NCBI RefSeq assembly: GCF_004010195.1
Contig: NC_057735.1
Coordinates: 11,013,371-11,077,370 of the forward strand
DNA length: 64,000 nucleotides
Direction of reading: 5' to 3'
Source of the DNA: Chiloscyllium plagiosum
Taxonomy: Eukaryota
A program made the translations under genes and the position numbers. Of the stretch, positions 4,368-61,151 are shown in pieces. Position 1 is the first letter of the stretch. The number at the start of each line of letters is the position of its first letter. Under the pieces are notes generated by a model, which worked only from the letters and a program-made list of their open reading frames with translations, did no database searches and had not been told where the DNA came from.

Positions 4368-4506
4368 TCAAACTGTGTCTCTTGCTTCGAAACCCCTCCA
4401 CCCAGGGCCACCACATTGATGTTTTCGCGTAAACATCGTGACTGAAACAGAACAAATCACCAGGAGAGTGAAGAGTACCCAGCGTATCACATCCCAGGCA
4501 ACGTAA
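4368..4506 (-). CDS. Gene A TM/tail exon: YVAWDVIRWVLFTLLVICSVSVTMFTRKHQCGGPGWRGFEARDTV*
   Basis: Acceptor ttctgttttacacag, phase 2. Hydrophobic helix with Asp/Arg near its N-terminal end. Homologous to 22418-22508. Confidence 0.85.
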
Positions 4507-7500
4507 CTGTGTAAAACAGAAGAAATACAAAATCATTTGAAGGAAACAAAACTGCTTGATGTTTCAAACATTTATCCCCTGTTTACACTGCAGTGCATTG
4601 TAGCAAAGTAAAGCAGCACAGCTCAGGGAGTAATGTGGGAAACTTAAATTACAGTTTAATTTATTACTGACATGTACAACAGATAACGATCAAATGAGAC
4701 ACATTTCAATTGCACATCTTTTTCTTTTAATCATTCATGGGATGAGGACGTCACTGGCTAGGCCAGCATGTGTTGTCCATCCCTAATTACCCAGAGGGCA
4801 CTTAAGAGTGAACCTCATTGCTGTTGGTCTGGAGTCACATGTATTCCAGACCAGGTAAGGAAGGCAGTTTCCTTCCCTGAAGGACATGGATTCATGGCCA
4901 TTGGTAGACTCTTAATCCCAGATATTTATTGAATTCAAATTCCACCATCTGCCACAGCAGAATTTGAATCCAGTCCAGCAATAGTACCACAAAATCATCA
5001 CTACCCCACTGCCTCCTATAATGGTATTTATACCTGATGAGGCAGTCTTTCTGTTAGCTCCTGTCAGATGTAGACAAGGCGTGGCTATTGTAGTCCTGAC
5101 AAATCGACAGATGTTCAGAACAGCTTCTGGTCTAAATGCATCTTACAGCCACAGATATGAACAACAGATAAAGGTCAAATGAAACAAGTTTCAGTGATAT
5201 GTCCTGAAATGTTCAACGTGTGGATTATCACATTAAATGGTTGGACATTTGCAGGAGCACTGCAGTCTGGTGTAATATTCCAGTGGGTGAGATGTCTCTT
5301 CAGTCAGTGAGGAACTCAGAATATCATCATCCCACACTGCTCCTGCACCTTCTAGCAGGCCAGTCTTATCCAGCTGGAACCAGACAGCCTTCCACCCCCT
5401 CAGTTTGGGAATAATGTATAAGATGAAAGAATGAAGAAGGAGAAAATGACAGAGAATGTGATGTCCAATAATTCTCCAGAACATCCTGGCTTAAAAAAGC
5501 TGTCATTGCTGGTCTTTGATAAATACCGTGAGCTGAGATAAATAATGAAGTATTGAATTTTAATGCTGAAAACTGCACCTGAATCTGGGAGGTTGCAAAC
5601 AGAAAGTTGGTACTTCCTGTTATGAATTTCCAATTAGATAAATAACAACATTGTAAGAAAGGCAATGGAAGTTCAGAACTAGAGGCATAAGAATAAGAAC
5701 TTGGAGCAGGAGTAGGCCATCCGGCCCTTCGAGCCTGCTCCTCCATTCAATAAGATCATGGCTGATCTTTTCATGGTCTCTGTTCCAGTCACCCGCCCTC
5801 TCACCATCCCCTTAATTCCTTTATTGTTCAAAATAATCTGTCTTAGCTTTAAAACCATTCACTGAAGGAGCGTCAACTACTTCACTGGGCAGGGAATTCC
5901 ATCAATTCACAACCCTCTGGGTGAAGAAATTCCTTCTTAATTCAATCCTAAATCTGCTGCCCATCATTTTGAGTATGTCCTTGTTTCACCTGCCAGTGGA
6001 AATATCCTCTCCACAACTCTCTTATCTACTCCCTTCATAATTTTATATCTTTTGGTAAAATCCTCTTTCATTCTTCTGAATTCCAATGAATATAATCCCA
6101 GCCTACTCAGTCTCTTTCATAAGCCAACCCCCTGAACTCCTGAATCAACCTGGTGAACCTCTTCCGCAGTCCCTCCAATGCCAGTGTATCCTTTCTCAAG
6201 TATGGAGACCAAAACTGTACCCTGTACTCCAGGTGAGGCCTCACCAGCACCTGATACAGCTGCAATAGAACCTCTCTGCTTTTAAATTCAATCCCTTTAG
6301 CAATGAAGGACAAAATTCCATTTGCCTTCCTAATTACCTGATGTACCTGCAGACTAACCGTCTGTGATTCATGCACAAGAACACCCAGGTCCTTCTGCAT
6401 AGCAGCATGATGCAACTTTTTACCGTTCAAGTAATAGTCCTTGTTACTGATTCTCCTACCCAAATGTATGACTTCACAATTATTAAAAATGTATTCCATC
6501 TGCCAGACCTTTGCCAATCACATAAGGTATCTATGTTCCTCTGCAAAGTTTCACAGTCCTCTGCACACTTTGCTCTGCCACTCACCTTAGTGTCATCTGC
6601 AAACTTTGACCCCATACATGAGATGCCCAACTCCAAATTATCTATATAATTTGTAAATAATTGTGGTCCCAACATTGATCCCTGAGGCACACAAGTAGTT
6701 ACTGATTGTCAACTAGAATAGCATTCATTTATCCTCACTCTTTGCTTCCTGTTAGTTAACCAATCCTCTATCCTCTAATACTTTACCCATAATGCCATGC
6801 ATCTTTATCATATGCAGCAACCTCTTCTGTAGCACCTTATCAAAGGCTTTTTTGAAATCCAGGTACACTACATCTACTGGGTCCCCACTGTCCATAGTGC
6901 TCATAATATCTCCATAGAATTCCAAAAGGTTAGTTAAGCATAACCTGCCCTTCATGAACCCACGCTGCGATTGCCTAACAGGACAATTTCTATCGAGATT
7001 TCTTGTTATTTCTTCTTTGATAATGGGCTCAAGCAACTTCCCCATGACAGGTTCAGCTAACCAGTCTATAATTCCCCATCTTTTGTCTACTGTCCTTTTT
7101 AAACAGTGGCGTCATATTTGCTGTTTTCCAATCTGCTGGAACTGCCCCAGTCTCCAGCGAATTTTGGAAAATCACCACAAGTGCACTTGTTATTTCTCTC
7201 ACCATCTCTTTTAGCACCCAGGGATGCATTCCATCAGGGCCAGGAGGCTTATCTGTTCTTAGCTCCATTAGCTTGCCCAACACTAGCTCTTCCATAATAA
7301 TGATTGTTCCCAGGGCCTCACCTACCTCCATCTCTTTGTCAGTTACTGGTATGTTATTTGTGTCCTCCACTGTGAAGACTGACACAAATTTCCCTTTCCC
7401 CCAACTCGCTAGTTGAAAGTCCTAGTGAACACAGTGTTTCTTTTTTGCTCGAACACTGGTCCAGATCGGTTCAGGTGGAGACCGTCCCATCAGTGCAGGT

Positions 7501-10500
7501 CCTTCCTGTTCCAAAGCTGATGCCAATGCCCCATGAATGGAACTCCTCTTTCCCGCACCACTCCTTTAGCCACATGTTTACTTCCCTAATTTTCTTATCC
7601 CAAAGCCAATTTGCACATGATTTGGGTAGTAATCTAGAGATGAAAACCCTCGAGAACCTGTTCCTTCATTTCGTTCCTAGTGGTTGATAATACTCAGACA
7701 GGTAATAGCCTTGCCTATGTTGTTGGAGGACAATAACTGGACCCTCCCCCTCCCACTCCAAATCCTTTCAAGCTGGTCAGAGATGTCTGCACCCTGGCAG
7801 CAGGCTGACAACACACCATACGGGATTCCGGATCAGTCTTGCAAAGGATGCTATCTATCCCACTAATTATAGAATCCCCTATAACGACCACTTGTCTTTT
7901 AGCTCTCCCCCCTCTTGAATGGCCTTCTGCACCATGGTGCTGTGGTCAGCTAGTTCATCATCCCCACAGCCCTTTTCCTCATCCACACCGGGAGCAAGCA
8001 TCTCATACCTGTTGGAAAAGGTTAAAAGCTGAGACTCCTTCATTCCTGAACTCAGAATCCCCCTACCTGCCTCACTCAACACACCCTTTTGCCCCTGATC
8101 ACAGATTTGAATTACTTAATCTACCAGGTGCGACTGCCTCCTGAAACAAAGGGACCTACGGGGCATCTTTTTCACAGAGAGTGGTGCATTATGGAATGAG
8201 CTGCCAGAGAAAGTGGTGGAGGCTGGGACAATTATGACATTTAAAAGGCATCTGGATGGGTATATGCACAGGAAGGTTTTAGAGGGATATGGGTCAAGAA
8301 TTAGTCAATGGGATTAGATTAGTTTAGGATATCTGGTCAGTATGGATGAGTTGAACAAAAGTGTCTGTTTCCACACATATATCTCTATGACTGTTTGACT
8401 CTATAATTGCGCTGTACACAATCATCCACCATTTCCATTTTGATAAATCATAGTCTGAAATGGAAAATTATTGGAATCCTTTATGCTAAATCACTTATTC
8501 TCACTTGGAATCAATGAAATATTGACAATGAAAATGGCCTACCTTTTAGTGACAGACTTAGATTCTGAAGGTGTTGTTGTTGTTCGTGACGTTGTTGGCG
8601 AAATTGTTGAGGAATTGTCACAAAAATATTCCTCTCCTATTGAGACATAAGAAAATATTCAGTTTCATCTGAGTCTCACTTGCAGACAACCGAAGAGCTC
8701 TCCTCACCAATGGAACCTCACGGCTTGTTGTGAACATTGAAATTTATTGAATTAATTTCTCTTTAACCTCCCCCCACCCCCGACCTCTGTCGAGAATTAT
8801 GTGGTAGTGACCTACCTTGAACATAATTTGTGTTGTGTTCCTCGCCTGGACATTGATGCGACTGCATTCTTATTAAAATATTTGAAATGCTGAGGTTGGT
8901 GGGACTGTATTCCTGAGGTCCCCTTTCTCATCCTTGTCAAACATAAAGGAATGTTCCAGACACTGAGCTGGTCACTCTCCCCGCTGGACAATGTATTCCT
9001 TGGGGGATCCAATAGTCTCTCCTGTTATATCCTGTGATTGCTGGGTGACCTTTCAATGTGGTTTGGATTTTTGCCTCCACCATGGTATTTCTACCTAAAA
9101 AGGCTGGAGTTATGTTTGCTCCTTAAATATGAGTAGGCAAGCAGGAGGCTGGAATGACACAGCAAGCCAGGCAGCATCAGGAGGTGGAGAAGTCAATGTT
9201 TTGAGTGTAACCCTTCTTCAGGGCTGGGGGTGGGGTGAGGGGAGCCACGGATAAAGGGGATGGGATGATATAAGAGTGTTTTGGGTGGGGAGAGGGGGNN
9301 NNNNNNNNNNNNNNNNNNNTTGGGGGGGGGAGGGGGGGATTGGTGAGGTAGTGAAAGCTGAACACTGGTTAGAGGGTACGGCCTGGTTTGGCGATGGAAA
9401 GGATGTGTCCAGTTGGTGGCTGGAAGGAAGGGTCAGTCAGAGGCATGGAAGGGAGGGGGGAGCTGGAAAAAAAGTTGGAAGATGGATAGGGAGGTTATTT
9501 GAAATTAGAGACTTCATTGTTGAGTCCTCCGGGCTGTACGCTGCCCAGGCAGAAGATAAAGTGTTCTTCCTCCAATTTGCGATCTGATTCACTGTGGTAA
9601 TGGAGGAGGCTGAGAATAGACATGTCGGAAATGGAGTGGGAAAGGGAATTAAAATGGGCAGTGACCTGGGGGTTTAGTTGGCCCCTTCAGGCCTATATGA
9701 TTTGCTCAGCGAACCATTCCCTAAGTTAACGTTTGGTTTCCGCGATGTAGAGAAGACCACATCGGGTGCAGTGGATACATAAACTCGGTTGGAGGAGAGG
9801 CAGGTGAACCTTTGTCTCACCTGGAAGGACTGTTTTGGGGCTGGATGGAGTTGAGGGGGGTGGTGTACCAGCAGGTTTTGCATCTTTTATAGTTACAGGG
9901 GAAGGTAATGGGGGTTTGGGGATTTGGTGGTGATAGTGGCGGGAACCAACAAGTGATGAAGGCAACGGTGTTTGTGGAAGGTGGAGGGGGGTGGGGACAG
10001 GAAGATATTCTTGATCGTGATGTCTAGTTGATGTTCACAAAAGTGTTTAAGGATGATATGTTGGAGGCGGAGACTGGGGTGGAAGGTAAGGACAAGGGAC
10101 ACCCTGTCCTTATTGTGTTTGGTGAGGGGGTGGGGGGAGCAGTTTTAGAGCAGTGGAGCAGGAAATGGAGGAGGTATGCTGTAGTGCTGTCTGGATGAGA
10201 GGTGAGTGGGAGTGTGGTGGGTCAGACCCTTAAACGTGAGGACGAGGCATGGATTTGTAGTAATGTCAAATCAGTGTCTGTCCTAAGCATATCTCAAAGT
10301 CACAGGCACTTCAGGGACTCCTACAGAGTTAAAGAGATGTAGAGCACAGAAACAGACCCTTCAGTCCAACTCATACATGCCGACCCGATATCTTAAACTG
10401 ATCTAGTCCCATTTGCCAGCCCTTGTCCCTTATCCCTCTAAACCCTTGCTATTCATGCCTTCTTTATGTTCAAAATCACACAACACCAGGTTGTAGTCCA

Positions 10501-13500
10501 ACAGGTTTATTTGGAAGCACTAGCTTTCGAAGTGCTGCTCCTTCATCAGGTGGTTGTGAAGCAGGACCATAAGACACAGAATTTATCGCAAAAGATTACA
10601 GTGTCATGCAGCCACTCCAACCCCGGCTCCTCCAAATCATGACTTTCACCTGTTGGAATTGTACCAGTCTCTGCCACTTATCTGGCAGCTCAGTGCATAC
10701 ACAATGCTTTAAAACATTGCAACTTAGGTCACTTTTAAATCTTTCCCCTCTCACCATAAATCTATGTCCTTGTGTTCTGGATTCCCCCACTCCAGCGAAA
10801 AGACTTTGTCTATTTATCCTATCCATGGCTCTAATGATTTTATAAATCTCTATAAGGTCATCCCTCAGCCTCTGACGCTGCAGGGAAAACAGTCCCAGCC
10901 TATTCAGCCTCTGCCTATAGTTCAAATCCTTCAACCTTGTAGGATTTACAACTGTGCAGCAGCTCATGTGGCTGCACTCTCACTTTTGATGGCAGCATGT
11001 TGGGGGTTCCAGTTCCCCTTCGGGGTTAAAATTCAGCTGGATCCCTTGTAAAACTTTTCTGAATCCTTTCAAGTTTCACAACATCCTTCCCATAGGAGGG
11101 AGACCAGAATTGCACACAGCATTCCAAAAGTAGGCAAAAGTGAGGACTGCAGATGCTGGAAACCAGAGTTTAGATCACAGTGGTTCTGGAAAAGCACAGC
11201 AGGTCAGGCAGCATCCGAGGAGCAGGAAAATCGATGTTTCGGGCAAAAGCCAATCCTGATAAAGGGCTTTTGCCCAGAACATCGATTTTCCTGCTCCTCA
11301 GATGCTGCCTGACCTGTTATGCTTTTCCAGCACCACTCCGCATTCCAAAAGTAGCCAAACCAATGTCCTGTACAGCCGCAACATGATCTCCCAACTCCTG
11401 TGTCAATGCTCTGACCAATAAAGGAGGGCATACTAAACATGCACTCCAAGGTCTCTTTGTTCAGCAACACGCTTCACGACCTTTTCATTAAGTGTATAAG
11501 TCCTGCTAAGATTTGCTTTTCTAAATGCAGCACTTCACATTTATCTAAATTAAACTCCATCGACTATTCCTCGGCCCATTGGCCCGTCTGATCAAGATCT
11601 GTTGTCCTCTGAGATAACCTTCTTCGTTGTCCACTTCACCTCCAATGTTGGTGTCATCTGTAAATTTACTAACCATACCTCCTATATTCAAATCCAAATT
11701 ATTTATATAAGTGATGAAAAGCAGTTGACCCAACACCAATCCTTGTGGCACTCCACTGATCACAGGCCTCCAGTCTGAAAAGCAACCCTCCACACCACCC
11801 TCTGTCTTCTACCTTTGAGCCAGTTCTATATCCAAATGGCTAGTTTTCCCTCTAATCCATGTGATCTAACCTTGCTTATCAGTGTAACATGTTGAACCTT
11901 GTTGAGCGCTTTACTGCAGTCCATGTAGACCACATCCACTGCATGCCCTCATTAATTGTCTTTGTTACTTCTTCAAAAAACTCAATCAAGTTTGTGAGAC
12001 ATGATTTTTCATGCACAAGACCATGTTGATCATCCCTAATCAGTCCTTGCCTTTCCAAATACATATGAATCAGGTCCCTCAGGATACCCTCCAACAACTT
12101 GCCCAACACCAATGTCAGGCTCTCCAGCCTATAGTTCCCTAGCCTTTCCTGACCAACTTTCTTAAATATGGCCTTGCATTAGCCCATCTCCAGTTTTGCG
12201 GCACCTCACCTGTGACTATCTTTAGTATGAATAGCATTACTTCTCTCTACTGGGCAGTGGGATCCAGCTGAATTTTAACCCCGAAGGGGAACTGGAACCC
12301 CCAACATGCTGCCATCAAAAGTGAGAGTGCAGCCACATGAGCTGCTGCTGATAGTTCCAAATACAGTTCCCGGGTGTCACTTCGACTTGATGCTGACTTG
12401 CTTCTTCTCTGACAGCTCAAACAGATCATATCAGGAAATGGCTGCAGGCAATATTTACAGATATTTCATTGTACAACTGATCTCCACTCTATCCCCAATA
12501 TCTGTCCGAAATCTGGACACAACAGTCACGGACTGAATTTGATAATTCCATTACTTAGAAAAATGCAAATCATTCGTCAATCAAATATTGTTTTAATTTG
12601 CAGAGATTATTGGAGTTTTTGAGATGTCTATGCATGCTGTGGATAGTATTTTATGCACCTCCTCATTTTCCAAGCACAGTGCAAAGAGTTGGCTTTGTTC
12701 AGAACAGACAAGAAGACAAATGGAGTGCATTTTCTCAATTACAGTTTCCCAGAGTGAGATAATAAACATTGTTTACATCACACTTACTGATGCTGTTGGT
12801 CTGTATCCTGTAACTGCAGTTCTTCTCTCTTACCTTGTTGACTGACACATGAACAATTTCACTGGATTTTGTTCCCTGAGTATTTGAGGCTGTGCAGTAA
12901 TATTGATGATGTCGCTGTGTGAAGGATTGACAATGTAGATCCAGTTTATTGGTGTAAGAGATCTTTGAATCTTGAGATGGCATCTTCTCAGACCATGTGT
13001 AGTGAATGGGGAGGGATCCCTGGGCAGACTCACAGGAGACTGTCACTGAACCCCCAGAACATGAGACATTTGTTTGGGATAAATATTGAAGCCCAGGAAC
13101 AGAAACGGCTTCTGTGGGAAAGAAACAATTATTGAGAGATCAAAGATCAAATATCCTCCAAAACTTTGTCATGTTTCTTCCTGAATAAAACACTGATCAA
13201 ATATATCAGGAGAGAGTAATTTTAAAAATCACTGAGACATTTACCGTCAGAGATGTTCAGCTTTACATTAAACATTGGGTCAAGGCCAGGAGTCTCGATC
13301 CCACAGCTGTACCATCCTGCATCTCCCCATTGAAGATTCGTGATTGTGACAAGAAATATTCCTTGTGTTTTGTTATTGATTGATATTCTCCCATTTGGCC
13401 AATTTGTCGTTGCTATAACCTTACACTGACGAGTCCATCCATGACACCAATATTTCATGCTTGGCTGGTACCTCCGTGCTTCATAGTGACAAGATATTGT

Positions 13501-16257: not shown

Positions 16258-16355
16258 CGTTTTATTCACAAAGATCAGTTCAGTTCTTGATGTCAGTCTC
16301 TCAACTCTTGTTTCTCACATTGGAATAAGTGTATAACGCAACGTCTACAAGAATT

Positions 16356-16367
16356 GAAATGAGGAAG
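16356..16367 (+). promoter_or_regulatory. Putative PU.1/Ets-IRF composite site GAAATGAGGAAG in the gene A promoter
   Basis: About 100 bp upstream of the ATG. Identical at 31149-31160. Fits GAAANNNGGAA. Confidence 0.5.
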
Positions 16368-22417: not shown

Positions 22418-22508
22418 CTAATGTTTTCGTGTAAACATTGTGACTGAAACAGAACAAATCACCAGGAGAGTGAAGAGTACCCAGCGTATCACATCCCAGA
22501 CAACGTAA
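22418..22508 (-). CDS. Gene B TM/tail exon YVVWDVIRWVLFTLLVICSVSVTMFTRKH*
   Basis: Phase-2 acceptor. The TAG is followed directly by the donor-like gtgagc. Confidence 0.88.
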
Positions 22509-31060: not shown

Positions 31061-31148
31061 CATTTTATTCTCAAAGATTTTTAATTTAGTCTCTCAACTC
31101 TTATTTCTCACTTTGAAGAAAGTGTGTTATGCAATGTCCGCAGGATGT

Positions 31149-31160
31149 GAAATGAGGAAG
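31149..31160 (+). promoter_or_regulatory. Putative PU.1/Ets-IRF composite site in the gene B promoter
   Basis: GAAATGAGGAAG, conserved with gene A. Confidence 0.5.
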
Positions 31161-44263: not shown

Positions 44264-47200
44264 ATCCTATCTACCTGCGACCTTCAAGGAGCTATGAACC
44301 TGCATTCCAAGGTCTCTCTGTTCAGCAACACTCCCCAGCACCTTACCATTAAATGTATAAGTCCTGCTCAGATTTGCTTTCCCAAAATGAAGCACCTCAC
44401 ATTTATCTGAATTAAACTCCATCTGCCACTTCTCAGCCCATTGACCCATCTGGTCAAGATCCTGTTGTAATCTGAGGCATCCCTCTTCAATGTCCACTAC
44501 ACCTCCAATTTTGATGTCATCTACAAACCTACTAACTGGACGTCTTATGCTCGCATCCAAATCATTTATGTACATGAGAAAAAATAGAGGGTCCAGCACC
44601 GATCCTTGTAGCACTCCACTGGTCACAGGCCTCCAGTCTGAAAAACAACCCTCCACCACCATCTAAGGTCTTCTACCTTTGAGCCAGTTCTGCATCCAAA
44701 TGGCTAGTTCTCCCTGTATTCTGTGAGAGCTAACCTTGCTAACCACTGTGCTCCATCGTGACAATATATTGTGATCGCTCTTCCCAAAATTCCCATTACG
44801 TGTTTCTCTGTCCATAAAGCACCTGTAACTGAGGAGTCAATATTTCAGAAATTTAACTGGGAAGAAATGCGTAACATAAACAGATATATTTTAATCAGCT
44901 ACATTCCATGGGGAACCTTGTTGAATGCCTTACTGATGTCCAGATAAATCACATCTATTGCTCTGTCCTCATCAATCCACGTTGTTACTTCTTCTTCTCT
45001 GTTATTTCACTGGATTTTGTTCCCTGAGTATTTGAGGCTGTGCAGTAATATTGATGATGTTGCTGTGTGAAGGATTGACAATGTAGATCCAGTTTATTGG
45101 TGTCAGAGATCTTTGAATCTTTAGATGGGGTCTTCTCAGACCATGTGTAGTGAATGGAGAGGGATCCCTGGGCAGACTCACAGGAGACTGTCACTGAACC
45201 TCCAGAACATGAGACATTTGTTGGGGATAAAATTCCAAGTTGGTGAGTGGAACAGCTTCTGTGGGAAAGAAACAACTATTGAGAAATTGAATGTAATCGA
45301 AACATCAAATACTCCCAAAACTTTGTCAAGTTTCTTCTGGGATTAAATATTGACCAGTCATCTCAACAAAGAGTAATAAAAAATATCACTGAGACCTTTA
45401 CCGTCAGAGGTGTGCAGCTTTACAGTAAACATTGGGTCAAGGGCAGGAGGCTCAATCCCACAGCTGTACCATCCTGCATTTCCCCATTGAAGATTCTTCA
45501 TTGTGTTAAGAAATATTCCTTGTGTTTGGTTATCAGTGATTGATGTTCTGGCCAATTTATTGTTGCTAGAAAATCAGAACGACGACTCCAAACGTGACAC
45601 CAATGTTTAATGTTTGATTGGTACCATTGTGCTCCGTCGTGACAATATATTGTGATCGCTCTTCCCAAAATTCCCATTATGTGTTTCTCTGTCTATGAAG
45701 TACCTGAAACGGAGGACTCAATATTTCAGAAATTTAACCGGGAAGAAATGTGTAACATAAACAGATATATTTTAATCAGCTACATTCCATCCAGTATATG
45801 ATAAAGGTAATCATTAATATAAACCCTTATCAGAGGCTCAGGGTGTGCAAATTCCCAGGGAATGATTGAAACAGTCAGGATATTTTCTTACCCCATTGGT
45901 CGTGCTTTGGGACAATCTTGAAATTGGGTTTGTGCTGCCCGCAGTGGGCTCTGACTCCACCGTGTGTGACATCATCGAAATGTTGTCCCCTCAGAGAGCA
46001 GCCTGAGTGACAGGCCTGGATTGGAGTCGGCTGGGGATCAGTGTGAAGGAGGGTACAGGTGCTGAAGGGTCCTTACTCCGACCGGAGAAGGAGGGTTTCA
46101 TCCAGGGAGGAGAGGGGAGTGTGTGGACTCATAGTGGGCTCAGGGGCTGCATTTTCAGGGCTCAAGGGGCAGATACAACAGGTGACCCAGGCAAGATGAT
46201 GAGAGACCTCAAGTTGGAGAGGTAGAGAATTGAACTTCAGCAAGGGATGGTTCATGAGGGGAGAGAGAGATCAATGTGCAGGGCCTTGAGGACAGTAAAG
46301 ACAGGATTGTTGTCAGTGTACAGATAGTAAAATAACAGCAGTAATTTACTGATTATTCTCTCCTCTCCTCTTAAAAATGTGCCCCTGAGTCTTGAAATTC
46401 CCCATCTCAGGGAAAAGACAACTACCATCAACTCTATCTATATCTCTCAGTATTTTATAATCTCCTGTCACATCACTTCTCAACTTCCTAAGCTCTTCTG
46501 AACTCCAGCAAATCCTAGCCTAAGCTATATACAACATGCAACTAAAGATGTTTCACGAGAGATAATCCTGTATCTTAGATTTAATCCAACCACCATTAAA
46601 TATCATGGACCAACCCTATTTACTGCTCATCGACACTGAGTTTGTCTTCTGCCAGGGACGTCAGAGGGCATCCTTCCCAACATGGTATCAGTGGCTCAGA
46701 TTAATGCCAGCATGATGGATTGGTGGTGTCTAATCTACCCAAGATATCCCAGATCATATCCTGCATTACAAGATTGAAAACTTCCTTCTCAGCAGCAATC
46801 TTTGACCATAATAGAGCAATCAATCAGAAACACACTTCTGAAAAGTGCTTTCCATCATGATCTTAGTTCCAGTTAAGTGCCCTATTCAGAACTTGAGTAA
46901 GAAATGGTCCTTTCTCATTCTCACTAATGCTGTGGTATCAGGGTTGCAACTGGATCATGGCAGCCACTTTTAAAGATGGCACCTATCTCTTGAATTGGGA
47001 AACACACTCTGTAATTCTAAGACACCCTGTATTCTTGTCCAAAATCAATTCTCCCTGGTCCTCTACTTACACTTTTAGCATCAATATCTTGAGCTGTTCC
47101 ATTGTTCTGCCTTTCTTTCCCTTCAAAGTTTACGCAATCTCAAAGTATTCCTTGTTTCTGAAGTCTTTGGCAGCTCTCACCCTCATTTATCTTCTTTTCT

Positions 47201-52820: not shown

Positions 52821-52869
52821 TACTACATACTTAGTATGATACCAGCATTGTAATTCATATTCCACATTA

Positions 52870-53413: not shown

Positions 53414-53704
53414 CTAACATTTAACATTAGCATAAATTGCCATTTCAGATTCAGGTGGATTCTCTGTTGTTGAAGAGACTACATTGTCCTCTGGAAGCTG
53501 GCTTTGAACCAGGGCATTTCCCCTGTTAGCTGAACAACTTGATGTCTCACCATTCCGTGCTGATGACTTCTTTTGAAAGTGTAAATCTGCATATATGACT
53601 CCATCTGTAGTATTCTTGAAATGGACAGTTCCTTCACTCTGTCTTGACCTGCTTTGACTGTGAATACTTGAATATACAATGTTCTCTTCTGCTCCTACCA
53701 TTTG
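53414..53704 (-). CDS. Gene D terminal cytoplasmic exon with ITIMs
   Basis: Acceptor tttttgttttag. Motifs IVYSSI, VIYADL and AIYANV, then TAG. Confidence 0.9.
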   Translation of the reverse strand, partial: QMVGAEENIVYSSIHSQSRSRQSEGTVHFKNTTDGVIYADLHFQKKSSARNGETSSCSANRGNALVQSQLPEDNVVSSTTENPPESEMAIYANVKC

Positions 53705-56700
53705 CTAAAACAAAAACACAAAGTTTGAATTCATTTTTGATTAATGGTAATTTGTGTTACTATGAAGGGAAATCTATTTTTGGATTATCATAAATTAATT
53801 GACAAACTGTTACAAGTTTTATAAGTTATCCAGCAATGAAACAAACAATTCGGTCTGGTAAGTTCATCGACACAAACCTGCTCACATTAGTCTTCATTTA
53901 AAACAATGGTATGTGCTTTCAGTCCTTTCCAGCTCGTGTGCTGATGTGAAGTGGCAGTTAGGCAGTGTGGCAGTCAGTGTAGACGACAGCATATATATTC
54001 ACAAAGGGATACCCTGACAGACTAAGTGAATGGGCAACATTGTGACAGGTGGAGTTCAATGTCAGTGTGTGAGGTTATCTATTTTGGAATGAGAAAGGAT
54101 CGATCAGGATACTTTCTGGATGACATGAAGGTAAATATAATGAAGTTAAATATAATATAAAAGAAAGCTGGGAGTTCAAAGACCTTTAAAATGTCAAGTA
54201 AATCATCAATGAAGCTAACAGAATGCTGACCTTTATGTCTAGGGTGGCACAGTGGCTCAGTGGTTAGCACTGTCATTTCACGGCGCTAGGGACATGGATT
54301 TGATTCCCACCTCAGGCAACTGTCTGTGTGGAATTAGACACCTTCTCCCCGTGTCTGTGTGAGTTTCCTTTCAAAGTCTAAAGATTTGCAGGCCAGGTGA
54401 ATTGGCCATTCTAAATTGCCCATAGCGTTAGCTGCATTAGTCAGAGGGAAATGGGTCTGGGTGGATGCCTCTTCGAGGATTGGTGTGGACTTGGTGGACC
54501 AAAGGGCTGGTTTCCACACTGGAGGGAATCTAACTTTATTTGGAGGACACAGATGCAGAAGTGGTGCAACACTTATACAAAATCATGATTAGTTCCCACT
54601 TGGAGTACTCTGAGCAGATCTTGGCACTCTACCTCCGGAAGGCTATTTTGGCGTTGCAGGGAGTACAAAAGCAGGTTTACAAGAACATGACCAAGAATTT
54701 TGGGGTTAAGTTATGAGGAGGTTTGCAGAAATTTATGCCTGTTTTCTTTCAAATTTAGAAGTGTAGGGGGTGATCTGATTGAAATTTCAGGATATTAAAA
54801 GGACAAAACTGGGTAGATAAAGATTAACTATTTCCACTGGTTTCTTGAACGAGTGGGGATTATATTAGATTCTCTACAATGTAGGGATAGGCCCTTCGGC
54901 CCAACAAGTCCACACCGACCCTCCGAAGAGTAACCCACCCAGACCCATTCTCCTCTGACTAATGCATCTAACACTATGGGCAATTTAGCATGGCCAATTC
55001 ACCTGGCCTGCACATCTTTGGATGGTGGGCAGAAGCCAGAGCACCCAGAAGAAACCCACGCAGTCATGGGAAGAATGTGCAAATTCCACACAGACAGTCA
55101 CCTGAGGCTGGAATCGAACCTGGGTTCCTACTGCTTTGAGGCAGCAGTGCTAACCACTGAGCCACTGTGCCACCCTTAATGTGAGAATTAGGGCCAGACC
55201 ATTTGGGAGAGATATTTAAAATCACTTCTACATACAAAGGGTGGTAGATGTTTGGAATTCTGATTGAAGAAGCCCAAGTGAAGGATGAAAACATGCAACT
55301 CATTCAAAGAGGAGTGTGTCGTCATGGTGACTAGTGGAAGTAGATATTGGGGGAAAATACCATGAGGATTGATAGTATTTTCGTTTCCTTAATGTTTTTC
55401 TGTTTTTCTATGATTACATTGAACCCGACAGATGCAAATGCAGGTTGAAAAGTGTCAGCAAATACAAAGTCATGATTGAGTGCTTAATTAATTCTAATTT
55501 TTAATTGTAAAGACGACTCAAATTTTTTTATGCCCATCAATGAGAATGTTCAAAGTTTCACCAAGAGCTAGTTCAGTCAGTAGCATGGATACATTGAAGG
55601 AGAATCTCAAGAAAGACAAGAGACAAAAGAGTGAGAAGCTTCTGTTGTTCGGGTTAGTTGGAGATGGGTGGGGGGGATGTTGGTGTTGAGTGTCCCACAG
55701 GGACCAGGTGTTCTGATTGGCCTGTTTCTGTGCTGCTAGTTCATTATGTTAATTTATGATTATTATTCAAAATATTCAAACTTGATCTCCTTACCTGATT
55801 CTCAAAAGCATTATCCGTTCCAGCACCTATACCACCTTTACCTGGAAAATTACAATAGGGATGATGGATATTTGTAAAAAGGCGACACTGATGACATGTT
55901 GCAGCCTGACATTGATTTGTTCTCTTCTTCTTCTTCAATTCTGTGCGTGAAGGCATTCGGGTTATTTAACCTGTTTGGCTGCTGTGTTATGAACACCCTT
56001 CCTTTCCATCAAGTCTCAGAGTGGGATTTGAACCCAGGATTTCGTGTGAAGAGGCAGGGATGCTATTATTGCCTTACAAGACCTCCAGTTCATCACCATA
56101 CAAAGGCAAGTAGTATTTTATATTTTGTTACAAAGGGATTAGTGTAACACATAGAGAAGCAGTGAATCCATAGTGGCTGTGCTGTTTGTAGTATTGGGCT
56201 CCGCGATGGGCCCACTTATCCTTGGGTTCGCTATTCCGGATGGAAATTGTTTTACAAGGAGGGCTTGAGTAGGATGAGCTTATATTTTCTGGCATTTTGA
56301 TGATTGGAAAGTAACTGCATTGAAATGTCTAACATTCTGAAGGGACTTAGAATCATAGCATCTATGATTTCTGCAGTGGGGAAACAGGCCATTTGGCCCA
56401 TTGAGTCCACACTAACCCTCCGAAGACCATCCCACCCAGACCCATACACCCTTCTCTATTACTGTATCTCTGAAAATCCCATGGGTAATCCATCCAGCCT
56501 GCACATCCCTGGACAATTTAACACGACCAACCTACTGAACCTGCACATCTTTGAACTGGAGGAGGAAGCTGGAGCACCCGGAGAAAACCCATACGGACAG
56601 GGAGAACATACAAATTCCACACAGTTACCCGAGGCTGGAATCAAGCCCGGGTATCTAGTGCTGTGTGAGGCAGCAGTGCTAACGACTGAGCCACCACGCC

Positions 56701-59700
56701 AGACTTGACAGGCAAACGTTGATAAACTGTTTCTTTTGGCTGTGGATTCTGGAGCTGAGTGTCATGGTCTCAGAATAAAGGGTGGGCCAAATTAGGACCG
56801 AGATTGAGCAAAATGTATTCACACAAAGATGAGTGAAACTTCAGAAGCCTCTCCCCAGACAGTTGTGAACACTCAGATACTGGGTGTATTGAAAGCAGAA
56901 ACCAATAGATTGTTGGGAACTTGGGGAATTCAGGCATTCATAGGAAAAGACCACTCACTGAAAGATTTCCCCTTAAAAAAACAGAAATAGTAGAGAAAGA
57001 ATCATCTTGGTCTTAACAGAGATTTACTTTACAGTAAACTAAACCTCATTAGATTTTATAAAATACAGAGATGCAGATGCTGGAGATCTGGAAAAAACCT
57101 GAGGTTGCTGGAGAAGCTGAGCAGGTCTGGCAGATGAAGATGAAGAGACACTGGACCTAAAATGTTAACTCTGCTTTCTTCCCACAAATGCTGCCACACC
57201 TGCTGAGTTTTCCATCAGATTTTACCCTGACAAGATCCTACAGAGAATCCAGAACCAAACTCGGCAATCAGTCAGGATTTCAATATTGGGCATCTGAATC
57301 TACATCTAATTCTCTTAAAGAGGAAGTACTGCTCCTGAATTTGACTGCAACTGATTATTATTGGATCAAATGGGAGAAATTCCACTTATGAAGTCTTCAA
57401 TACTTGCAATTGTAATGTCCATGTTTCAAAAATACGTTACATCAAGGTCTATCTAAATTTCAATTGACCAAATCACTTCCTGTCATTCACTTCTGTCAGT
57501 CTAAACCAATGTAGACTTCTCCTTCCTCCAGACTCCACCTCTTGTTAGTGAGAAACATTAATTATTATTCTCCTAGGTTATATCCATCTGGACCAGAACG
57601 TGGAACAAGTTACTCCAATTTATTAATTAATGTTTGCTATTTACAATGAATTGCAATTCATACAGCAAGCAATTGACATTTCATGAAATGATTAAGGAGA
57701 AAGCGACACTTACCCTTCTTGACTTGCCTCAGGTACAAAAGCAGAGAAACAGCAAAAACAATGATCATGGCCCCCAGTGCACCGACCACAATGTAAACCA
57801 GACTGTGATACAGAGAACAGGAAAGGGTCAGTGTGTGTTCACAATTGGTTCTTGGGCACTTGTTTAAAGAAAGGAGGCTTTAACATTTATATAACACCTT
57901 TCATGACCTTTGAATGGCCCTCAGCATTTTACAGTTAAGGAAGTACTTTTGAATGTTTGATAGTGTCTGAAACAGGAAATGAAGAAAAATCTCATGAGTA
58001 ACAATGAGATATGACCAAACAAATATTGGCTAGATCTTTAGCGGAGCTCCTTATTTGTTTTCTCCAAACATATGGTCTGACTTGCTGCGTGCATCCACCA
58101 CTCTCTATTTCTGTTTAATTTTCACTTCTCATTTCCATTGTGTTTGATATTTTGTTTCTTTTTACTCTGCTAGAACCATTGGAAATTCAAAGACTCAATT
58201 CCTCAGTGTTTATAACAGATGACAATTTCTGATACTTGCTGTCAGCAGTTTGAGCAAATAGCGTGGAAATGTGAAGTGAATTCTGCAAAATGACTATGTA
58301 CATCACAAATGAAAATGGAAAGATCTCCATCAAGCATTGACTTAACATGACACAAGGTCCAGCTGCCACCAGATAAACACCCAGTTGTTCCACCATTGGC
58401 TGACTGTGAAAATAGGACTCACCATCTCCATGGACTTCAGTAAGACGTTAGATAAGGTTCCACATGGTAGACTGTGGAGAAAGTAAAGTCGTATGGGGTC
58501 CAGGGTGTACTAGCTAGATGGATAAAGAACTGCCTAGGCAACAGGTGACTGAGAGTAGTAGTGGAAAGGAGTTTCTCAAAGTGGAGATCTGTGACCAGTG
58601 GTGTTCCACAGGGCTGTGTGCTGGGACCACTGTTGTTTATGATATACATAAATGATCTGGAGGAAGGTATTGGTGGTCTGATTAGCAAGTTTACAGATGA
58701 CACTAAGATTGGAGGAGTAGCAGATAGCGAAAGGGACTGCCAGAGAATACAGCAGAACATAGATAGATTGGAAAGTTGGACCGAGAAATGCCAGATTGAG
58801 TTTAATCTGGACAAATGTGAGGTGATGCATTTTGGAAGATCCAATTCAAGAGTGAACTCTACAGTAAATGGAAAAGGGCAAAAGTGAGGACTACAGATGC
58901 TGTTGATCAGAGTCTAGATTGGAGTGGTGCTGGAAAAGCACAGCAGGCCAGGCAGCATACGAGGAGCAGAAAATTGATGTAAAAAGAGATCTGGGTATTC
59001 AGGTCCATTGTATCCTGAAGGTGGCAATGCAGGTCAATAGAGTGGTCAAGAAGGCATACGGCATGCTTTCCTTCATCTGACGGGTTATTGAGTACAACAG
59101 TTGGCAGGTCATGTTACAGTTGTATAAGACTTGGGTTCGGTCATGTTTGGAGTACTGCCTACAGTTCTGGTCACCACATTACCAAATGGATGTGGACGCA
59201 TTGGAGAGGGTGGAGAGGAGGCTTACCAGGATGTTGCCTGGAATGGAGGACACTAGCTATGAAGGGAGGTTGAGTAGATTAGCATTATTTTCATTAGAAA
59301 GACATAGGTTGATGGGTGACCTGATTGAGGTCTACAAAGTCATTAGAAGTACAGACCAGGTGGATAGCAAGAAGCTTTTTCCCAGGGTGGGAGACTCAGT
59401 TACTGGGGGGCTCATGAGTTCAAGGTGAGAGGGGAAAAGTTTGAGGGAGATATGCGTGGAAAGTCCTTCACATAGAGGGTGGTGCATACTGGAATGCGTT
59501 GCCAGCAGAGGTGGTAGAGGTGGGCATGATAGTGTCATTTAAGATGTATCTAGACAGATACATGAATGGGCAGGGAGCAAAGGGGTACACACCCTTAGAA
59601 AATAGGTGGCATGTTTAGATAGAGGATCTGGATCAGTACAGGATTGGAGGGCTGAAGGGCCTGTTCCTATGCTGTAATTTTCTTTGTTCTTAGTTCTTCT

Positions 59701-61151
59701 TTGACAGAGTCATAGATAGAATCATAGAATCACACAGCATGGGAACAGACCATCAGTCCAACTCGTTCACACTGACCAGACATCCCGAGTTGCATTTGCC
59801 AGCATTTGGCCCATATCGCTCTAAACTTTTCCTATTCATATATCCATCCAGATGCCTTTTAAAGTGATCATTGTACCCACCTCCACTACTTCCTCTGACA
59901 GAGTGTTCTGTACCTGCACTGCCCTCTGCATGAAAAAGTTGCCCCTTAGATCCTTGTTAAATCTTTCCTCTTTCATCTTAAACCTTTGTCCTTCAGTTTT
60001 GGACTCCCCCACCCAAGGAAATAGACCGTGGCTATTCACGGATCCATGGCCCTCATAACTTTATAATCCTCTGTAAGGTCATCCCTCAGCCTCCAAAGCT
60101 TCAAGGAAGAAAGCCCTAGCCTATTCAACTCTCCATCTAACTTAAACCCTCCAGTCTCAGCAACATTCTTGTGAATCTTTACTGCATCCTCTCACGTTTA
60201 ACAAATCCTTCCTGTCGACATACTATGGCAACGTCAACATCTGGGGGATCTATTTCGAACATCTTGACACCATTACTCACAATCACCTAATGTCTTGTAC
60301 CAGCCAAAAGGATACATCAAATACCATCATGTGAACAGACTTCCTCAAAACAATATTCCATTCTGCCTTGATTATATATTTTTGTTTCTTTGATGGAAGT
60401 GTGTGCAATTGCAACATTTAAAAGGCATCTGATGAGTATATGAATAGGAAGGGTTTAGAGGGATATGGGCCAAATGCTGGTAAATAGGACTAGGTCAGAT
60501 TGGGATGTCTGGTCAGCACAGATGAGTTGGACCAAAAGATCTGTCTCTGTGCTGTATGAGTCTATGACTCTATCTATGACTCTGCACTGTAAGGTACCTG
60601 GTATCTCCTACACCACATTGAGAATACCATCAAGAAGAAGGCCTCTTCACTGCAACTTTGTCCAAAGTTGACCAGGTGTTCCTCCCAAGTGAGACCAATG
60701 CTGAGCAGATTTATTAACACACAGCAGATTTATTAACATTTCCCTCAGGACCACACCGGGGTGGAAAAAGGCAAGGTCAATGTGACATTCATAGTCATCA
60801 TGAAATCCAATCAAGGTAGTAATTGTGATGAATAATGGATCTGAGGGCCAGCAACCTGTAGCTGTTTTCCTCTTGTTCTTATTTCCAACACAAATATCAT
60901 AATTTTTTCAAAGGCTAATGCCACAGCCTGATGTCAATCCAGCCCCATTTCCATTCTGAGAGTTATGTCGTGAAATCGGAAATGATTTCCATCCTGAATA
61001 ACAAAACATTGTTCAAGCGGATTTAATCTATCACATGGAAGTCATCAAACACTAACGCTGAGATAGTCGTACCTTATATTAAGTTGAGACGTGACGTTTG
61101 AATTTGTAGTTTTCGATGATACTGTTGAAATTTTATAGCAGTAATCAGCTC
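53414..61151 (-). CDS. Gene D (partial, 3' exons): ITIM-bearing inhibitory receptor of the same family
   Basis: Exons 61073-61151 (ADYCYKISTVSSKTTNSNVTSQLNI), 57714-57802 (TM), 55795-55841 and 53414-53704 splice in frame (phases 2,1,0). Confidence 0.82.
54241..54530 (+). mobile_element. tRNA-derived SINE (HE1/V-SINE-like)
   Basis: A box and core as at 3434. Confidence 0.8.
54865..55175 (-). mobile_element. tRNA-derived SINE (HE1/V-SINE-like)
   Basis: Reverse-complement copy of the same family. Confidence 0.85.
55795..55841 (-). CDS. Gene D short cytoplasmic exon GKGGIGAGTDNAFENQ
   Basis: Acceptor attttccag, donor gtaagg, 47 nt. Bridges phase 1 to phase 0 exactly as required. Confidence 0.7.
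56370..56702 (-). mobile_element. tRNA-derived SINE (HE1/V-SINE-like, diverged)
   Basis: Same head and core motifs. Confidence 0.75.
57714..57802 (-). CDS. Gene D TM exon LVYIVVGALGAMIIVFAVSLLLYLRQVKK
   Basis: Acceptor ctctgtatcacag, donor gtaagt. Uncharged helix followed by a basic stop-transfer segment. Confidence 0.9.
58429..59700 (+). mobile_element. 5'-truncated CR1 LINE (same family as 40362-44263)
   Basis: GVPQGCVLGP...KFTDDTKIGG and an identical type of ttctttg tail. Confidence 0.9.
59705..60215 (-). mobile_element. CR1 LINE 3' end
   Basis: LFPWVGESKTEGQRF...FFMQR. Confidence 0.85.
61073..61151 (-). CDS. Gene D stalk exon
   Basis: Acceptor ctttgtttaaatag, donor gtacga, 79 nt, phase 1 to 2. 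The start (x)ADYC parallels EEYFC/REYTC of genes A/B. Confidence 0.78.

What the first reader, a model, noticed from the sequence alone, without database searches (positions are those of the whole stretch)
4368..61151. Paired activating/inhibitory CD300/pIgR-like receptor cluster in a probable shark genome
Seen in sequence: two intact genes and one pseudogene with charged TM segments and short tails sit in tandem with a gene that has a homologous stalk exon and the same exon phases, but an uncharged TM and ITIMs. Established: this is the layout of paired immune receptor families (CD300, LILR/PIR, KIR, teleost NITR/LITR/PIGRL). Inference: an expanding lineage-specific innate receptor system, with several activating copies beside one inhibitory member. 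The ORF track misses the leader, stalk and TM exons, so automated annotation could overlook the pairing.
Basis: partly seen in the sequence, partly recalled or inferred. Interest (0 to 1): 0.92.

Follow-up and report, generated by a model that had tools for sequence, protein, structure and literature searches.

The report
Bamboo-shark MDIR activating/inhibitory receptor cluster
This stretch of whitespotted bamboo shark DNA holds two intact activating-type immune receptor genes, one dead copy and part of an inhibitory relative, and all belong to the MDIR receptor family already described in skates, so it is a real but not new kind of system.

Summary
On the minus strand there are two intact genes, A and B. 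Each has leader, CD300/pIgR-type V, FCRL-type C2, Ser/Thr stalk and a W-D-V-I-R-W transmembrane exon with a short tail. Gene C is a dead copy. Gene D is represented by its 3' half: a homologous stalk exon, an uncharged TM and a tail with two canonical ITIMs plus one ITIM-like motif. Splice sites are canonical and the stalk and TM phases agree in A, B and D. The N gap (9299-9319) lies in an intron of A.

The window is Chiloscyllium plagiosum. NCBI model XP_043572162.1 contains the B leader, V and C2 and the D stalk, TM, cytoplasmic and tail exons exactly, but fuses D to B. Its N-terminal part gives D a V-C2-V-C2 ectodomain related to A and B.

The family is not new. Clearnose-skate "modular domain immune-type receptors" (MDIR2, MDIR5) are clear homologues with the same domain order, TM motif and ITIM tail.

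RNA support is thin: one probable RNA contig leaves the genome at the predicted C2 donor. First-reader notes from other windows of this genome report the same family.

Verdict: new members of a known family, interest 0.33. The open bold reading is that MDIRs are the Ig receptors that reviews say sharks lack.

The parts
16221..16257 (-). Gene A leader exon (MWTLILFICSIP, phase 1 end)
   Evidence: ATG, hydrophobic core and GTGAGT donor; conserved in B at 93%
13245..13550 (-). Gene A V exon, CD300/pIgR-type V-set domain
   Evidence: Pfam V-set 7.7e-9. PDB: CLM-1/CD300LF 3.5e-14, pIgR 7.7e-35 over several domains. Phase 1 at both ends.
12788..13111 (-). Gene A C2 exon, FCRL-type, 324 nt, ending ...EKNCSYRIQTNSI
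   Evidence: PDB best match FCRL5 at 7.5e-24. GTAAGT donor keeps the frame into the stalk exon.
9299..9319 (.). Assembly gap (N) inside gene A's C2-to-stalk intron
   Evidence: G-rich flanks, no exon touched. Continuity across it was not tested and it was not filled.
8543..8636 (-). Gene A stalk exon (EEYFCDNSSTISPTTSRTTTTPSESKSVTK), phase 1 to 2
   Evidence: 81% identical to B's copy
4368..4506 (-). Gene A TM and short-tail exon (YVAWDVIRWVLF...TRKH plus 16 residues, then stop)
   Evidence: A 55-bp deletion relative to B and C removes the ancestral stop.
31024..31063 (-). Gene B leader exon (MMWTLILLICSIP)
   Evidence: exact in XP_043572162.1
28670..28978 (-). Gene B V exon
   Evidence: Pfam V-set 3.1e-10 on the ORF inside it; exact in XP_043572162.1
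28213..28536 (-). Gene B C2 exon
   Evidence: Exact in XP_043572162.1. A contig of run X1 stops fitting the genome at 28211, within 2 bases of the predicted donor.
25522..25783 (-). Dead relic of a C2 exon inside gene B's intron
   Evidence: 83% identical to A's C2 over positions 61-322. The 5' end is replaced by a repeat and there is an in-frame stop.
23405..23501 (-). Gene B stalk exon (REYTCDNSSTISPTTSPTATRTSSGPKSVSQ)
22418..22508 (-). Gene B TM exon (YVVWDVIRWVLFTLLVICSVSVTMFTRKH, stop)
45402..45703 (-). Gene C V exon, dead
   Evidence: Stop at codon 3, a 7-bp deletion and further stops
45004..45258 (-). Gene C C2 exon, cut off at its 3' end
   Evidence: Matches A's C2 only at positions 29-256. 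The reading frame runs into unrelated sequence.
38515..38604 (-). Gene C TM exon with a 1-bp deletion and Arg to Cys
39150..39277 (-). Second TM-exon copy in gene C's unit, open frame (YIVWDLIRWALFTLLVICSVSVRIFT, stop)
   Evidence: 89% identical to A's TM exon; translation
61073..61151 (-). Gene D stalk exon (ADYCYKISTVSSKTTNSNVTSQLNI), phase 1 to 2
   Evidence: exact in XP_043572162.1 at residue 444
57714..57802 (-). Gene D uncharged TM exon (LVYIVVGALGAMIIVFAVSLLLYLRQVKK)
   Evidence: exact in XP_043572162.1 at residue 470
55795..55940 (-). Gene D first cytoplasmic exon, phase 1 to 0
   Evidence: Found through the NCBI model; exact at residue 500, canonical AG and GT
53414..53704 (-). Gene D last exon: tail with IVYSSI, VIYADL, AIYANV and a TAG stop
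   Evidence: exact in XP_043572162.1 at residue 548
2347..2926 (-). Relic of a further unit: last 32 bases of a C2 exon plus its downstream intron
   Evidence: 90% identical to 12233-12819; C2 positions 293-324 at 2926..2895

Best explanation
The window is part of the MDIR (modular domain immune-type receptor) gene cluster of the whitespotted bamboo shark. A unit of about 15-18 kb was duplicated in tandem.

Genes A and B each encode a type I membrane protein with these parts:
- a signal peptide
- a CD300/pIgR-type V domain
- an FCRL-type C2 domain
- two extra cysteines, one at the end of C2 and one in the stalk
- a Ser/Thr-rich stalk
- a membrane span with Arg three residues in and Asp just outside it (W-D-V-I-R-W)
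- a tail of 4 to 20 residues

Inferred mechanism for A and B: the Arg pairs with the membrane Asp of an ITAM adaptor. Its position suggests the FcR-gamma/CD3-zeta type, or otherwise DAP12. Ligand binding would then activate the cell.

Gene C is a decayed copy.

Gene D is a longer relative, V-C2-V-C2 by the NCBI model. It has the same leader and stalk type, an uncharged span and a tail of about 150 residues with two canonical ITIMs and one ITIM-like motif. Inferred mechanism: after tyrosine phosphorylation these recruit SHP-type phosphatases and damp the same cells.

What is shown: gene structures, domain kinship, family membership and the decay of C. What is inferred: adaptor use, signalling, ligand, and expression of the stalk and TM exons.
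For: Gene structure: exon structures, canonical splice sites and matching phases.

Duplication: tandem blocks are 77-93% identical.

V domain: Pfam V-set. PDB matches are CD300LF 3.5e-14 and pIgR 7.7e-35. With a 14-sequence family profile they are CD300LF 1.5e-29, CD300A 7.5e-22, NKp44 1.2e-12 and TREM2 3.5e-10.

C2 domain: FCRL5 at 7.5e-24 and 5.8e-45 with the profile.

Species and D's ectodomain:
- XP_043572162.1 of C. plagiosum holds eight of the window's exon translations exactly.
- Residues 1-442 of that model form V-C2-V-C2. They are 41-45% (V) and 55-69% (C2) identical to A and B.

Family:
- All 74 of the 76 hits (E at most 1e-10) to the catshark member P0081 whose listed name shows a species are sharks or rays; one hit has no name and one name is cut off before the species. 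They include skate 'Modular domain immune-type receptor 5' (5.4e-139) and 'MDIR 2' (1.4e-71).
- MDIR2 matches A's V exon at 58% (5e-36) and its C2 at 62%. MDIR5 has W-K-V-G-R-W in its span.
- Of 215 fetched proteins, 23 carry the W-x-x-x-R-W span, 13 carry an uncharged ...LLYL[RK] span followed by ITIMs, and 1 carries both (the fused model).
- In the V-domain tree, activating and inhibitory members mix inside a well-supported carpet-shark clade of 9 rows (100/99).

Print: skate MDIRs are called multigene activating/inhibitory families with CD300-like V domains (passages of PMC3031540).
Against: - Expression and splicing of the stalk and TM exons are not shown. The one probable RNA run (X1) has a contig on B's C2 exon that leaves the genome at the predicted donor. 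It has no depth on B's TM exon, and none of the 15 joints listed links C2 to stalk or stalk to TM (234 more joints were not shown).
- Runs X15-X17 cover introns like exons and behave as DNA.
- The NCBI model joins B's C2 to a stalk and TM that are not in this window. B's own 3' exons therefore lack annotation support here.
- D's V and C2 exons lie beyond 64000. I know them only from a computer-made model that is itself chimeric.
- A 2014 paper reports finding no FcR-gamma chain in sharks, so the proposed adaptor is unproven.
- No ligand is known.
- The type labels in the tree rest on predicted models that may be fused.
Confidence: 0.85

Rival explanations
1. The MDIR genes here are the shark's immunoglobulin receptors. 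The pIgR/CD300-type V and FCRL-type C2 domains would bind shark IgM or IgW. The Arg-span forms would drive uptake or activation, and the ITIM forms would damp it. This would fill the place of the Fc receptors and pIgR that reviews say cartilaginous fish lack.
For: The two domain types are nearest to pIgR/CD300 and to FCRL5 among solved structures. FCMR also matches the V profile at 3.2e-9. A 2014 paper and a 2026 review state that sharks lack pIgR, FcRL and the classical Fc receptors, and the review asks how sharks manage phagocytosis and Ig transport (passages). A reference list cites an 'Fc receptor for shark IgM' paper from 1988 (reference list only).
Against: Domain kinship says nothing about the ligand. 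Mammalian CD300 receptors, the nearest single V-domain match, bind lipids (a ceramide ligand for CD300f is stated in an abstract listed). No binding data exist. The V loops differ strongly between A and B (77 of 101 residues identical, with changes clustered in three stretches that I take for loops), which does not suggest one conserved ligand.
Confidence: 0.1
2. A and B are silent or decaying copies like C, and only other members of the cluster are used. The intact frames would then be due to the youth of the duplication.
For: No RNA cover of B's TM exon in run X1. The NCBI model does not use B's own stalk and TM. dN/dS between A and B is 0.63 for V and 1.17 for C2, with only 15 differences in C2. 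C decayed in the same array.
Against: Five exons each in A and B keep open frames and all splice signals, although intron divergence is 12-16%. At the same age C has collected stops, deletions and truncations. An RNA-like contig covers B's C2 exon and ends at its donor. Contigs show presence, not absence.
Confidence: 0.1
3. D and B are one gene, as NCBI model XP_043572162.1 has it: a single 954-residue protein.
For: The model exists and contains exons of both genes exactly.
Against: D's last exon ends in an in-frame TAG. B starts with its own ATG and signal peptide. A dead gene, C, lies between them. The product would have a second signal peptide and a second ectodomain after a cytoplasmic tail. 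Residues 650-660 and 899-954 of the model have no exact match in the window. A Hemiscyllium model shows a similar fusion of two neighbouring activating genes.
Confidence: 0.03

Closest known systems
MDIR, modular domain immune-type receptors of clearnose skate (Cannon et al. 2006, Immunogenetics 58:362; seen only as a citation and in passages of PMC3031540)
   Same: Clear sequence homologues. They share the leader, alternating CD300-type V and C2 domains, the x-Y-x-C stalk motif, the W-x-V-x-R-W span in activating forms, and the ...LLLYLR span with ITIM tail in inhibitory forms. They are described as a multigene activating/inhibitory family.
   Different: A different lineage, shark rather than ray: the V domains form separate shark and ray clades (100/98 each). 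The span here reads W-D-V-I-R-W, against W-K/T/E/N/S-V-G-R-W in the ray proteins. This is a genomic tandem array with a pseudogene and exon relics. I could not read the 2006 paper, so I cannot say how much of the gene structure it reports.
Mammalian CD300 (CMRF35-like) family
   Same: It is the best single-domain match of the V exon: CD300LF at 3.5e-14, and 1.5e-29 with the profile. The V domain has the K-Y-W-C...C extra cysteine pair. The family has paired activating (charged span, short tail) and inhibitory (ITIM) members in a gene cluster; the CD300A/CD300C pairing is stated in an abstract listed.
   Different: From recall, CD300 proteins have a single V domain and no C2 domain. Here every member has V plus an FCRL-type C2. 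Synteny was not testable.
Polymeric Ig receptor and teleost pIgR-like genes
   Same: V-domain kinship: pIgR scores 7.7e-35 summed over five domains, with the best single domain at 1.3e-8. NCBI names many shark members 'polymeric immunoglobulin receptor-like'.
   Different: In the solved pIgR chains only V-type domains match. There is no FCRL-type C2, no charged-span forms and no ITIM tails (recalled).
FCRL (Fc receptor-like) family
   Same: The C2 exon's best solved relative is FCRL5, at 7.5e-24, and 5.8e-45 with the profile. FCRL members also carry ITIM or activating signalling (recalled). NCBI names several shark members 'Fc receptor-like protein 2/5/6'.
   Different: FCRL ectodomains have no CD300-type V domain (recalled). 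Only one of the two domain types here is FCRL-like.

Membership tests
MDIR (skate modular domain immune-type receptors) | Sequence homology to the named skate MDIR proteins over the ectodomain | tested here: met
   MDIR2 (P0197) against the window: V 58% over 108 residues (5e-36) and C2 62% over 92. MDIR5 (P0160): V 48-49%, C2 54-60%. Both are strong hits of the catshark member.
MDIR (skate modular domain immune-type receptors) | Modular ectodomain built from CD300-type V and C2 units (V-C2 or V-C2-V-C2) | tested here: met
   A and B are V-C2. D is V-C2-V-C2 by the NCBI model. MDIR2 is V-C2 and MDIR5 is V-C2-V-C2.
MDIR (skate modular domain immune-type receptors) | Both activating (charged span, short tail) and inhibitory (ITIM tail) members | tested here: met
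   A and B have W-D-V-I-R-W with tails of 4-20 residues. D has an uncharged span with IVYSSI and VIYADL. The same two modules occur in MDIR5 and MDIR2.
MDIR (skate modular domain immune-type receptors) | Expression in immune tissues | tested here: inconclusive
   One probable RNA contig on B's C2 exon. Tissue unknown, and no cover of the TM exon.
CD300 | Single V-type Ig domain as the whole ectodomain (recalled definition) | tested here: not met
   A C2 exon follows the V exon in A, B and C.
CD300 | V domain of the CD300/pIgR/TREM type with an extra cysteine pair | tested here: met
   K-Y-W-C...C is present. CD300LF is the best single-domain match.
CD300 | Orthology or synteny with the mammalian CD300 locus | not testable with these tools
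pIgR | Ectodomain of V-type domains only, and a long tail with transcytosis signals (recalled) | tested here: not met
   C2 domains alternate with V. Tails are either a few residues or ITIM-bearing.
FCRL | Ectodomain made only of FcR/FCRL-type C2 domains (recalled) | tested here: not met
   The membrane-distal domain is a CD300-type V. Only the C2 exon is FCRL-like.
Paired receptors in the strict sense | Activating and inhibitory members with closely similar ectodomains | tested here: met
   A against the same-species inhibitory protein P0188: V 83-84%, C2 91%. A and B against D inside the window: only 41-45% (V) and 55-69% (C2). So the close pair is not the one in the window.

The most novel reading that the evidence does not exclude
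MDIRs, which combine a pIgR/CD300-type V domain with an FCRL-type C2 domain and come in Arg-span and ITIM forms, are the immunoglobulin (Fc or polymeric Ig) receptors of sharks and rays. They may also reflect the ancestral arrangement from which the pIgR/CD300 and FCRL lines later separated. A 2014 paper and a 2026 review both state that cartilaginous fish lack pIgR, FcRL and classical Fc receptors, and the review leaves open how they handle opsonic uptake and Ig transport. This family has the right domain kinship to test that directly.
Probability: 0.1. Interest if true: 0.8.

Novelty: new member of a known kind. Interest (0 to 1): 0.33.

Why it matters
It gives clean, exon-level gene models for four bamboo-shark MDIR genes where the public annotation has a fused D-B model and inconsistent names: CMRF35-like, pIgR-like, FCRL5, uncharacterized.

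It shows that both signalling modules of the family, the W-x-V-x-R-W span and the ...LLLYLR span with ITIM tail, are shared by sharks and rays.

It shows at the level of solved structures that the family joins a CD300/pIgR-type V to an FCRL-type C2. This sits awkwardly with statements, repeated in a 2026 review, that cartilaginous fish have no pIgR or FcRL relatives. It also points to a family that can be tested for Ig binding.

As a discovery it is modest. The family was described in skate in 2006, and relatives are already in the public protein sets of many elasmobranchs.

Tried and rejected
1. A whole-window tblastx of the D region against A-C was swamped by LINE and SINE repeats and gave nothing usable. 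I went on with targeted alignments.

2. My first reading of the C2 exon end (AAG|GTAAGA) broke the frame into the stalk exon, so I dropped it for the GTAAGT donor 46 bases further on. The X1 contig later agreed with that choice.

3. An ATG upstream of V (MSLHT...) was considered as the leader and rejected: it has no hydrophobic core and the wrong phase. The real leader lies 2.7 kb upstream.

4. The C2-like copy in B's intron was considered as a possible extra exon and rejected: its 5' end is replaced by a repeat and it has an in-frame stop.

5. Read laying gave no joint between C2, stalk and TM among the 15 joints listed. All listed joints lie in repeats at 24553-27218, and 234 more were not shown.

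6. Paper searches for shark ITAM adaptors and for bamboo-shark CD300-like genes found nothing on point. The phrase 'modular domain immune-type receptor' occurs in one held paper only. I therefore cannot say whether shark MDIR clusters have been described elsewhere.

7. Two papers that cite the 2006 MDIR paper or CD300 in fish had no passage on MDIR or sharks.

8. A findings search by words returned nothing.

9. Positive selection on V was considered. dN/dS is 0.63 overall, so it is not shown.

Searches of the window's genes were exon by exon. Full-length comparisons used natural database proteins only.

11. Supplements were not consulted. I know of none that bears on a claim here.

Full report
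WHAT IS THERE

The window is repeat-rich vertebrate DNA of about 42% G+C. It holds many reverse-transcriptase fragments. A self-comparison shows three tandem units on one strand, roughly 2918-16682, 19502-31473 and 34404-46359. They are 77-93% identical in non-coding blocks. All genes read on the minus strand.

GENES A AND B

Each has five exons with canonical AG and GT borders.

Gene A:
- leader 16257..16221 (MWTLILFICSIP, one base over, GTGAGT)
- V 13550..13245
- C2 13111..12788
- stalk 8636..8543
- TM and tail 4506..4368

Gene B:
- leader 31063..31024
- V 28978..28670
- C2 28536..28213
- stalk 23501..23405
- TM 22508..22418

Leader, V and C2 join in phase 1. The stalk exon goes from phase 1 to phase 2. 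The TM exon begins with one base that completes a codon.

The C2 exon must end at the GTAAGT donor, which gives 324 nt. The earlier GT would break the frame.

The span reads Y-V-A/V-W-D-V-I-R-W-V-L-F-T-L-L-V-I-C-S-V-S-V-T-M-F-T-R-K-H. B stops there. In A, a 55-bp deletion removes that stop and adds 16 residues.

GENE C IS DEAD

- The V exon has a stop at its third codon, a 7-bp deletion and further stops.
- The C2 exon is cut off at 45004.
- No stalk or leader copy was found in the window.
- The TM exon has a 1-bp deletion and Arg to Cys.
- A second TM-exon copy with an open frame lies at about 39240..39150.

GENE D

Inside the window D has four exons:
- a stalk exon 61151..61073 with the same phases and an A-D-Y-C motif where A and B have E-Y-x-C
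- an uncharged span, LVYIVVGALGAMIIVFAVSLLLYLRQVKK (57802..57714)
- a cytoplasmic exon 55940..55795
- a last exon 53704..53414 with IVYSSI and VIYADL (both fit the ITIM pattern), AIYANV (ITIM-like) and a TAG stop

THE ASSEMBLY GAP

The N run at 9299-9319 lies in G-rich sequence within A's intron between C2 and stalk. It touches no predicted exon. I did not fill it or look it up. B carries a dead C2 relic in the homologous intron (25783..25522). No such relic was found in A, and I cannot exclude that the gap hides one.

DOMAIN KINSHIP, TESTED EXON BY EXON

V exon:
- It passes Pfam V-set (7.7e-9 and 3.1e-10).
- Among solved structures it matches CD300LF/CLM-1 best as a single domain (3.5e-14).
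- pIgR matches over its five domains (7.7e-35 in sum, best single domain 1.3e-8).
- CD300A, CD300C, TIM-4, TREM2, NKp44 and FCMR follow.

C2 exon:
- It matches FCRL5 best (7.5e-24 in sum, about 1e-4 per domain), then FCRL4.

A profile of 14 full-length natural family members sharpens both results:
- CD300LF 1.5e-29
- FCRL5 5.8e-45 on the C2 part
- FCRL4 1.6e-6

The ectodomain is therefore a CD300/pIgR-type V joined to an FCRL-type C2.

SPECIES AND PUBLIC ANNOTATION

A search of 1.84 billion representative proteins with A's V exon gave 1570 hits at E up to 0.001, and 60 at E up to 1e-30. Names were looked up for eight of them.

XP_043572162.1, 'uncharacterized protein LOC122562925' of Chiloscyllium plagiosum (954 residues), contains these translations exactly:
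- B's leader, V and C2
- D's stalk, TM, cytoplasmic exon and tail

The window is therefore bamboo shark.

That model is a fusion:
- Residues 1-649 are D.
- Residues 666-898 are B's first three exons.
- Residues 899-954 are a stalk and TM that are not in this window.

D's tail ends in a stop, and B has its own start and signal peptide, so I read the fusion as an annotation artefact. A Hemiscyllium model (XP_060700983.1) fuses two activating genes in a similar way.

The D part of the model gives D the leader MWTLILLICSIP, which is identical to B's apart from B's extra first Met. It also gives a V-C2-V-C2 ectodomain that is 41-45% (V) and 55-69% (C2) identical to A and B. These exons lie beyond 64000.

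FAMILY

A search with the catshark member P0081 gave 76 proteins at E up to 1e-10. Of these, 74 carry a listed name with a shark or ray species; one (P0212) has no name, and the listed name of another (P0170) is cut off before its species. They carry a jumble of automatic names: pIgR-like, Fc receptor-like 2/5/6, CMRF35-like 4/5/8, A33-like, CXADR-like, uncharacterized.

Among them are 'Modular domain immune-type receptor 5' (5.4e-139) and 'Modular domain immune-type receptor 2' (1.4e-71) of the clearnose skate.

- MDIR2 is leader, V, C2, stalk, uncharged ...LLLYLR span and ITIM tail.
- MDIR5 is V-C2-V-C2, stalk and a W-K-V-G-R-W span.
- MDIR2 matches A's V exon at 58% (5e-36) and its C2 at 62%.

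Of the 215 proteins fetched, 23 carry the W-x-x-x-R-W span, 13 carry an uncharged span ending ...Y-L-R/K followed by at least one ITIM, and 1 carries both (the fused model). The 14-sequence alignment shows the stalk x-Y-x-C motif and the tail motifs conserved from sharks to rays.

In print, PMC3031540 (passages read) calls skate and zebrafish MDIRs multigene families of activating/inhibitory receptors with CD300-like V domains. It cites Cannon et al. 2006. That paper itself is not held.

PAIRING

A V-domain tree of 40 rows was built from 28 proteins chosen because they carry a recognisable signalling module, plus A and B. All other fetched proteins were left out. It splits into a shark clade and a ray clade, 20 rows each with support 100/98.

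It places A and B in a clade of 9 carpet-shark rows (100/99). That clade also holds an inhibitory bamboo-shark protein, P0188, which is 84% identical to A's V. P0188's C2 is 91% identical to A's.

D's first V is sister to that of a Hemiscyllium model with an Arg span (100/98). So activating and inhibitory forms with near-identical ectodomains do exist, but D is not A's closest partner.

The labels depend on predicted models, some of which are fused.

DIVERGENCE OF A AND B

- V: 77 of 101 residues identical, dS 0.20, dN 0.13, ratio 0.63. The changes cluster in three stretches that I take for loops.
- C2: 96 of 107 residues identical, dS 0.043.
- Neighbouring introns differ by 12-16%.

The C2 exon looks homogenised, perhaps by gene conversion. 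Positive selection on V is not shown.

RNA

No listed holder of B's V-C2 stretch is on record as RNA. I laid four runs, kept as contigs, on 22400-28399.

Run X1 behaves like RNA, with zero depth in the unique intron bins. It has a 324-letter contig laid on 28211..28399. Forty-one of its letters do not fit the intron, and they start within 2 bases of the predicted C2 donor. X1 has no depth on B's TM exon.

Runs X15-X17 cover introns and exons alike and behave as DNA.

None of the 15 joints listed links C2, stalk and TM; 234 more joints were not shown. So the C2 exon border has some support, and the use of the stalk and TM exons has none from reads. It rests on conservation in other species' models, for example catshark P0081 and skate MDIR5.

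HOW IT LIKELY WORKS (INFERENCE)

A and B would reach the surface with an ITAM adaptor whose membrane Asp pairs with the Arg near the outer end of the span. From recalled mammalian examples, that position points to the FcR-gamma/CD3-zeta type rather than DAP12.

D, and relatives such as P0188, would recruit SH2 phosphatases through the ITIMs.

A 2014 paper reports finding no FcR-gamma in sharks (passages). My two paper searches found nothing newer.

COMPARISON AND NOVELTY

Membership in MDIR is met on homology, domain order and both signalling forms. Membership in CD300 proper, pIgR and FCRL fails on domain architecture, although each shares one domain type.

A 2014 paper and a 2026 review (passages) state that cartilaginous fish lack pIgR, FcRL and the classical Fc receptors. 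The review asks how they manage opsonic uptake and Ig transport. The MDIR domain make-up makes the family a candidate, and that is the boldest reading left open (about 0.1).

First-reader notes on other windows of this genome describe the same family up to about 400 kb beyond this window and 3.5 Mb before it. Three of them call it MDIR-like. These notes are unchecked and I give them no weight as evidence.

VERDICT

These are new members of a known family, with interest 0.33.

Noticed in passing
window 53414-61151 and 28213-31063; protein P0151: NCBI model XP_043572162.1 fuses the inhibitory gene D to the first three exons of activating gene B, and then to a stalk and TM that are not in this window. 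The Hemiscyllium model XP_060700983.1 fuses two activating genes in a similar way.
   Followed up: partly
window 12788-13111 against 28213-28536: The C2 exons of A and B are 95% identical (dS 0.043), while the flanking introns are only 84-88% identical. The exon looks homogenised, perhaps by gene conversion.
   Followed up: partly
window 4368-4425: A 55-bp deletion in gene A, relative to B and C, removes the ancestral TAG and the sequence after it. The tail then runs on for 16 more residues.
   Followed up: partly
window 39150-39277: Gene C's unit carries a second TM-exon copy with an open frame (W-D-L-I-R-W), about 640 bases upstream of the frameshifted one.
   Followed up: partly
window 2347-2926: A relic of another unit: the last 32 bases of a C2 exon plus its intron, 90% identical to A's. 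Its stalk and TM would lie before the window's start and may be the ones used by the NCBI model.
   Followed up: no
window 48210-48271: A weak TM-exon-like piece, 76% identical over 63 bases to A's TM exon, with stops. It lies between gene C and gene D.
   Followed up: no
window 28339: All four runs laid read G where the window has T, inside B's C2 exon. This is either a difference between individuals or a reference error.
   Followed up: no
window 3432-3721, 13661-13977, 54240-54533, 54865-55188, 56386-56704: Five copies of one short interspersed repeat, 68-83% identical. One lies just upstream of A's V exon, and reverse-transcriptase fragments are spread through the introns.
   Followed up: no
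window 23690-24110: A long simple, repetitive tract in B's intron. Read laying skipped 23766-24096 as a repeat.
   Followed up: no
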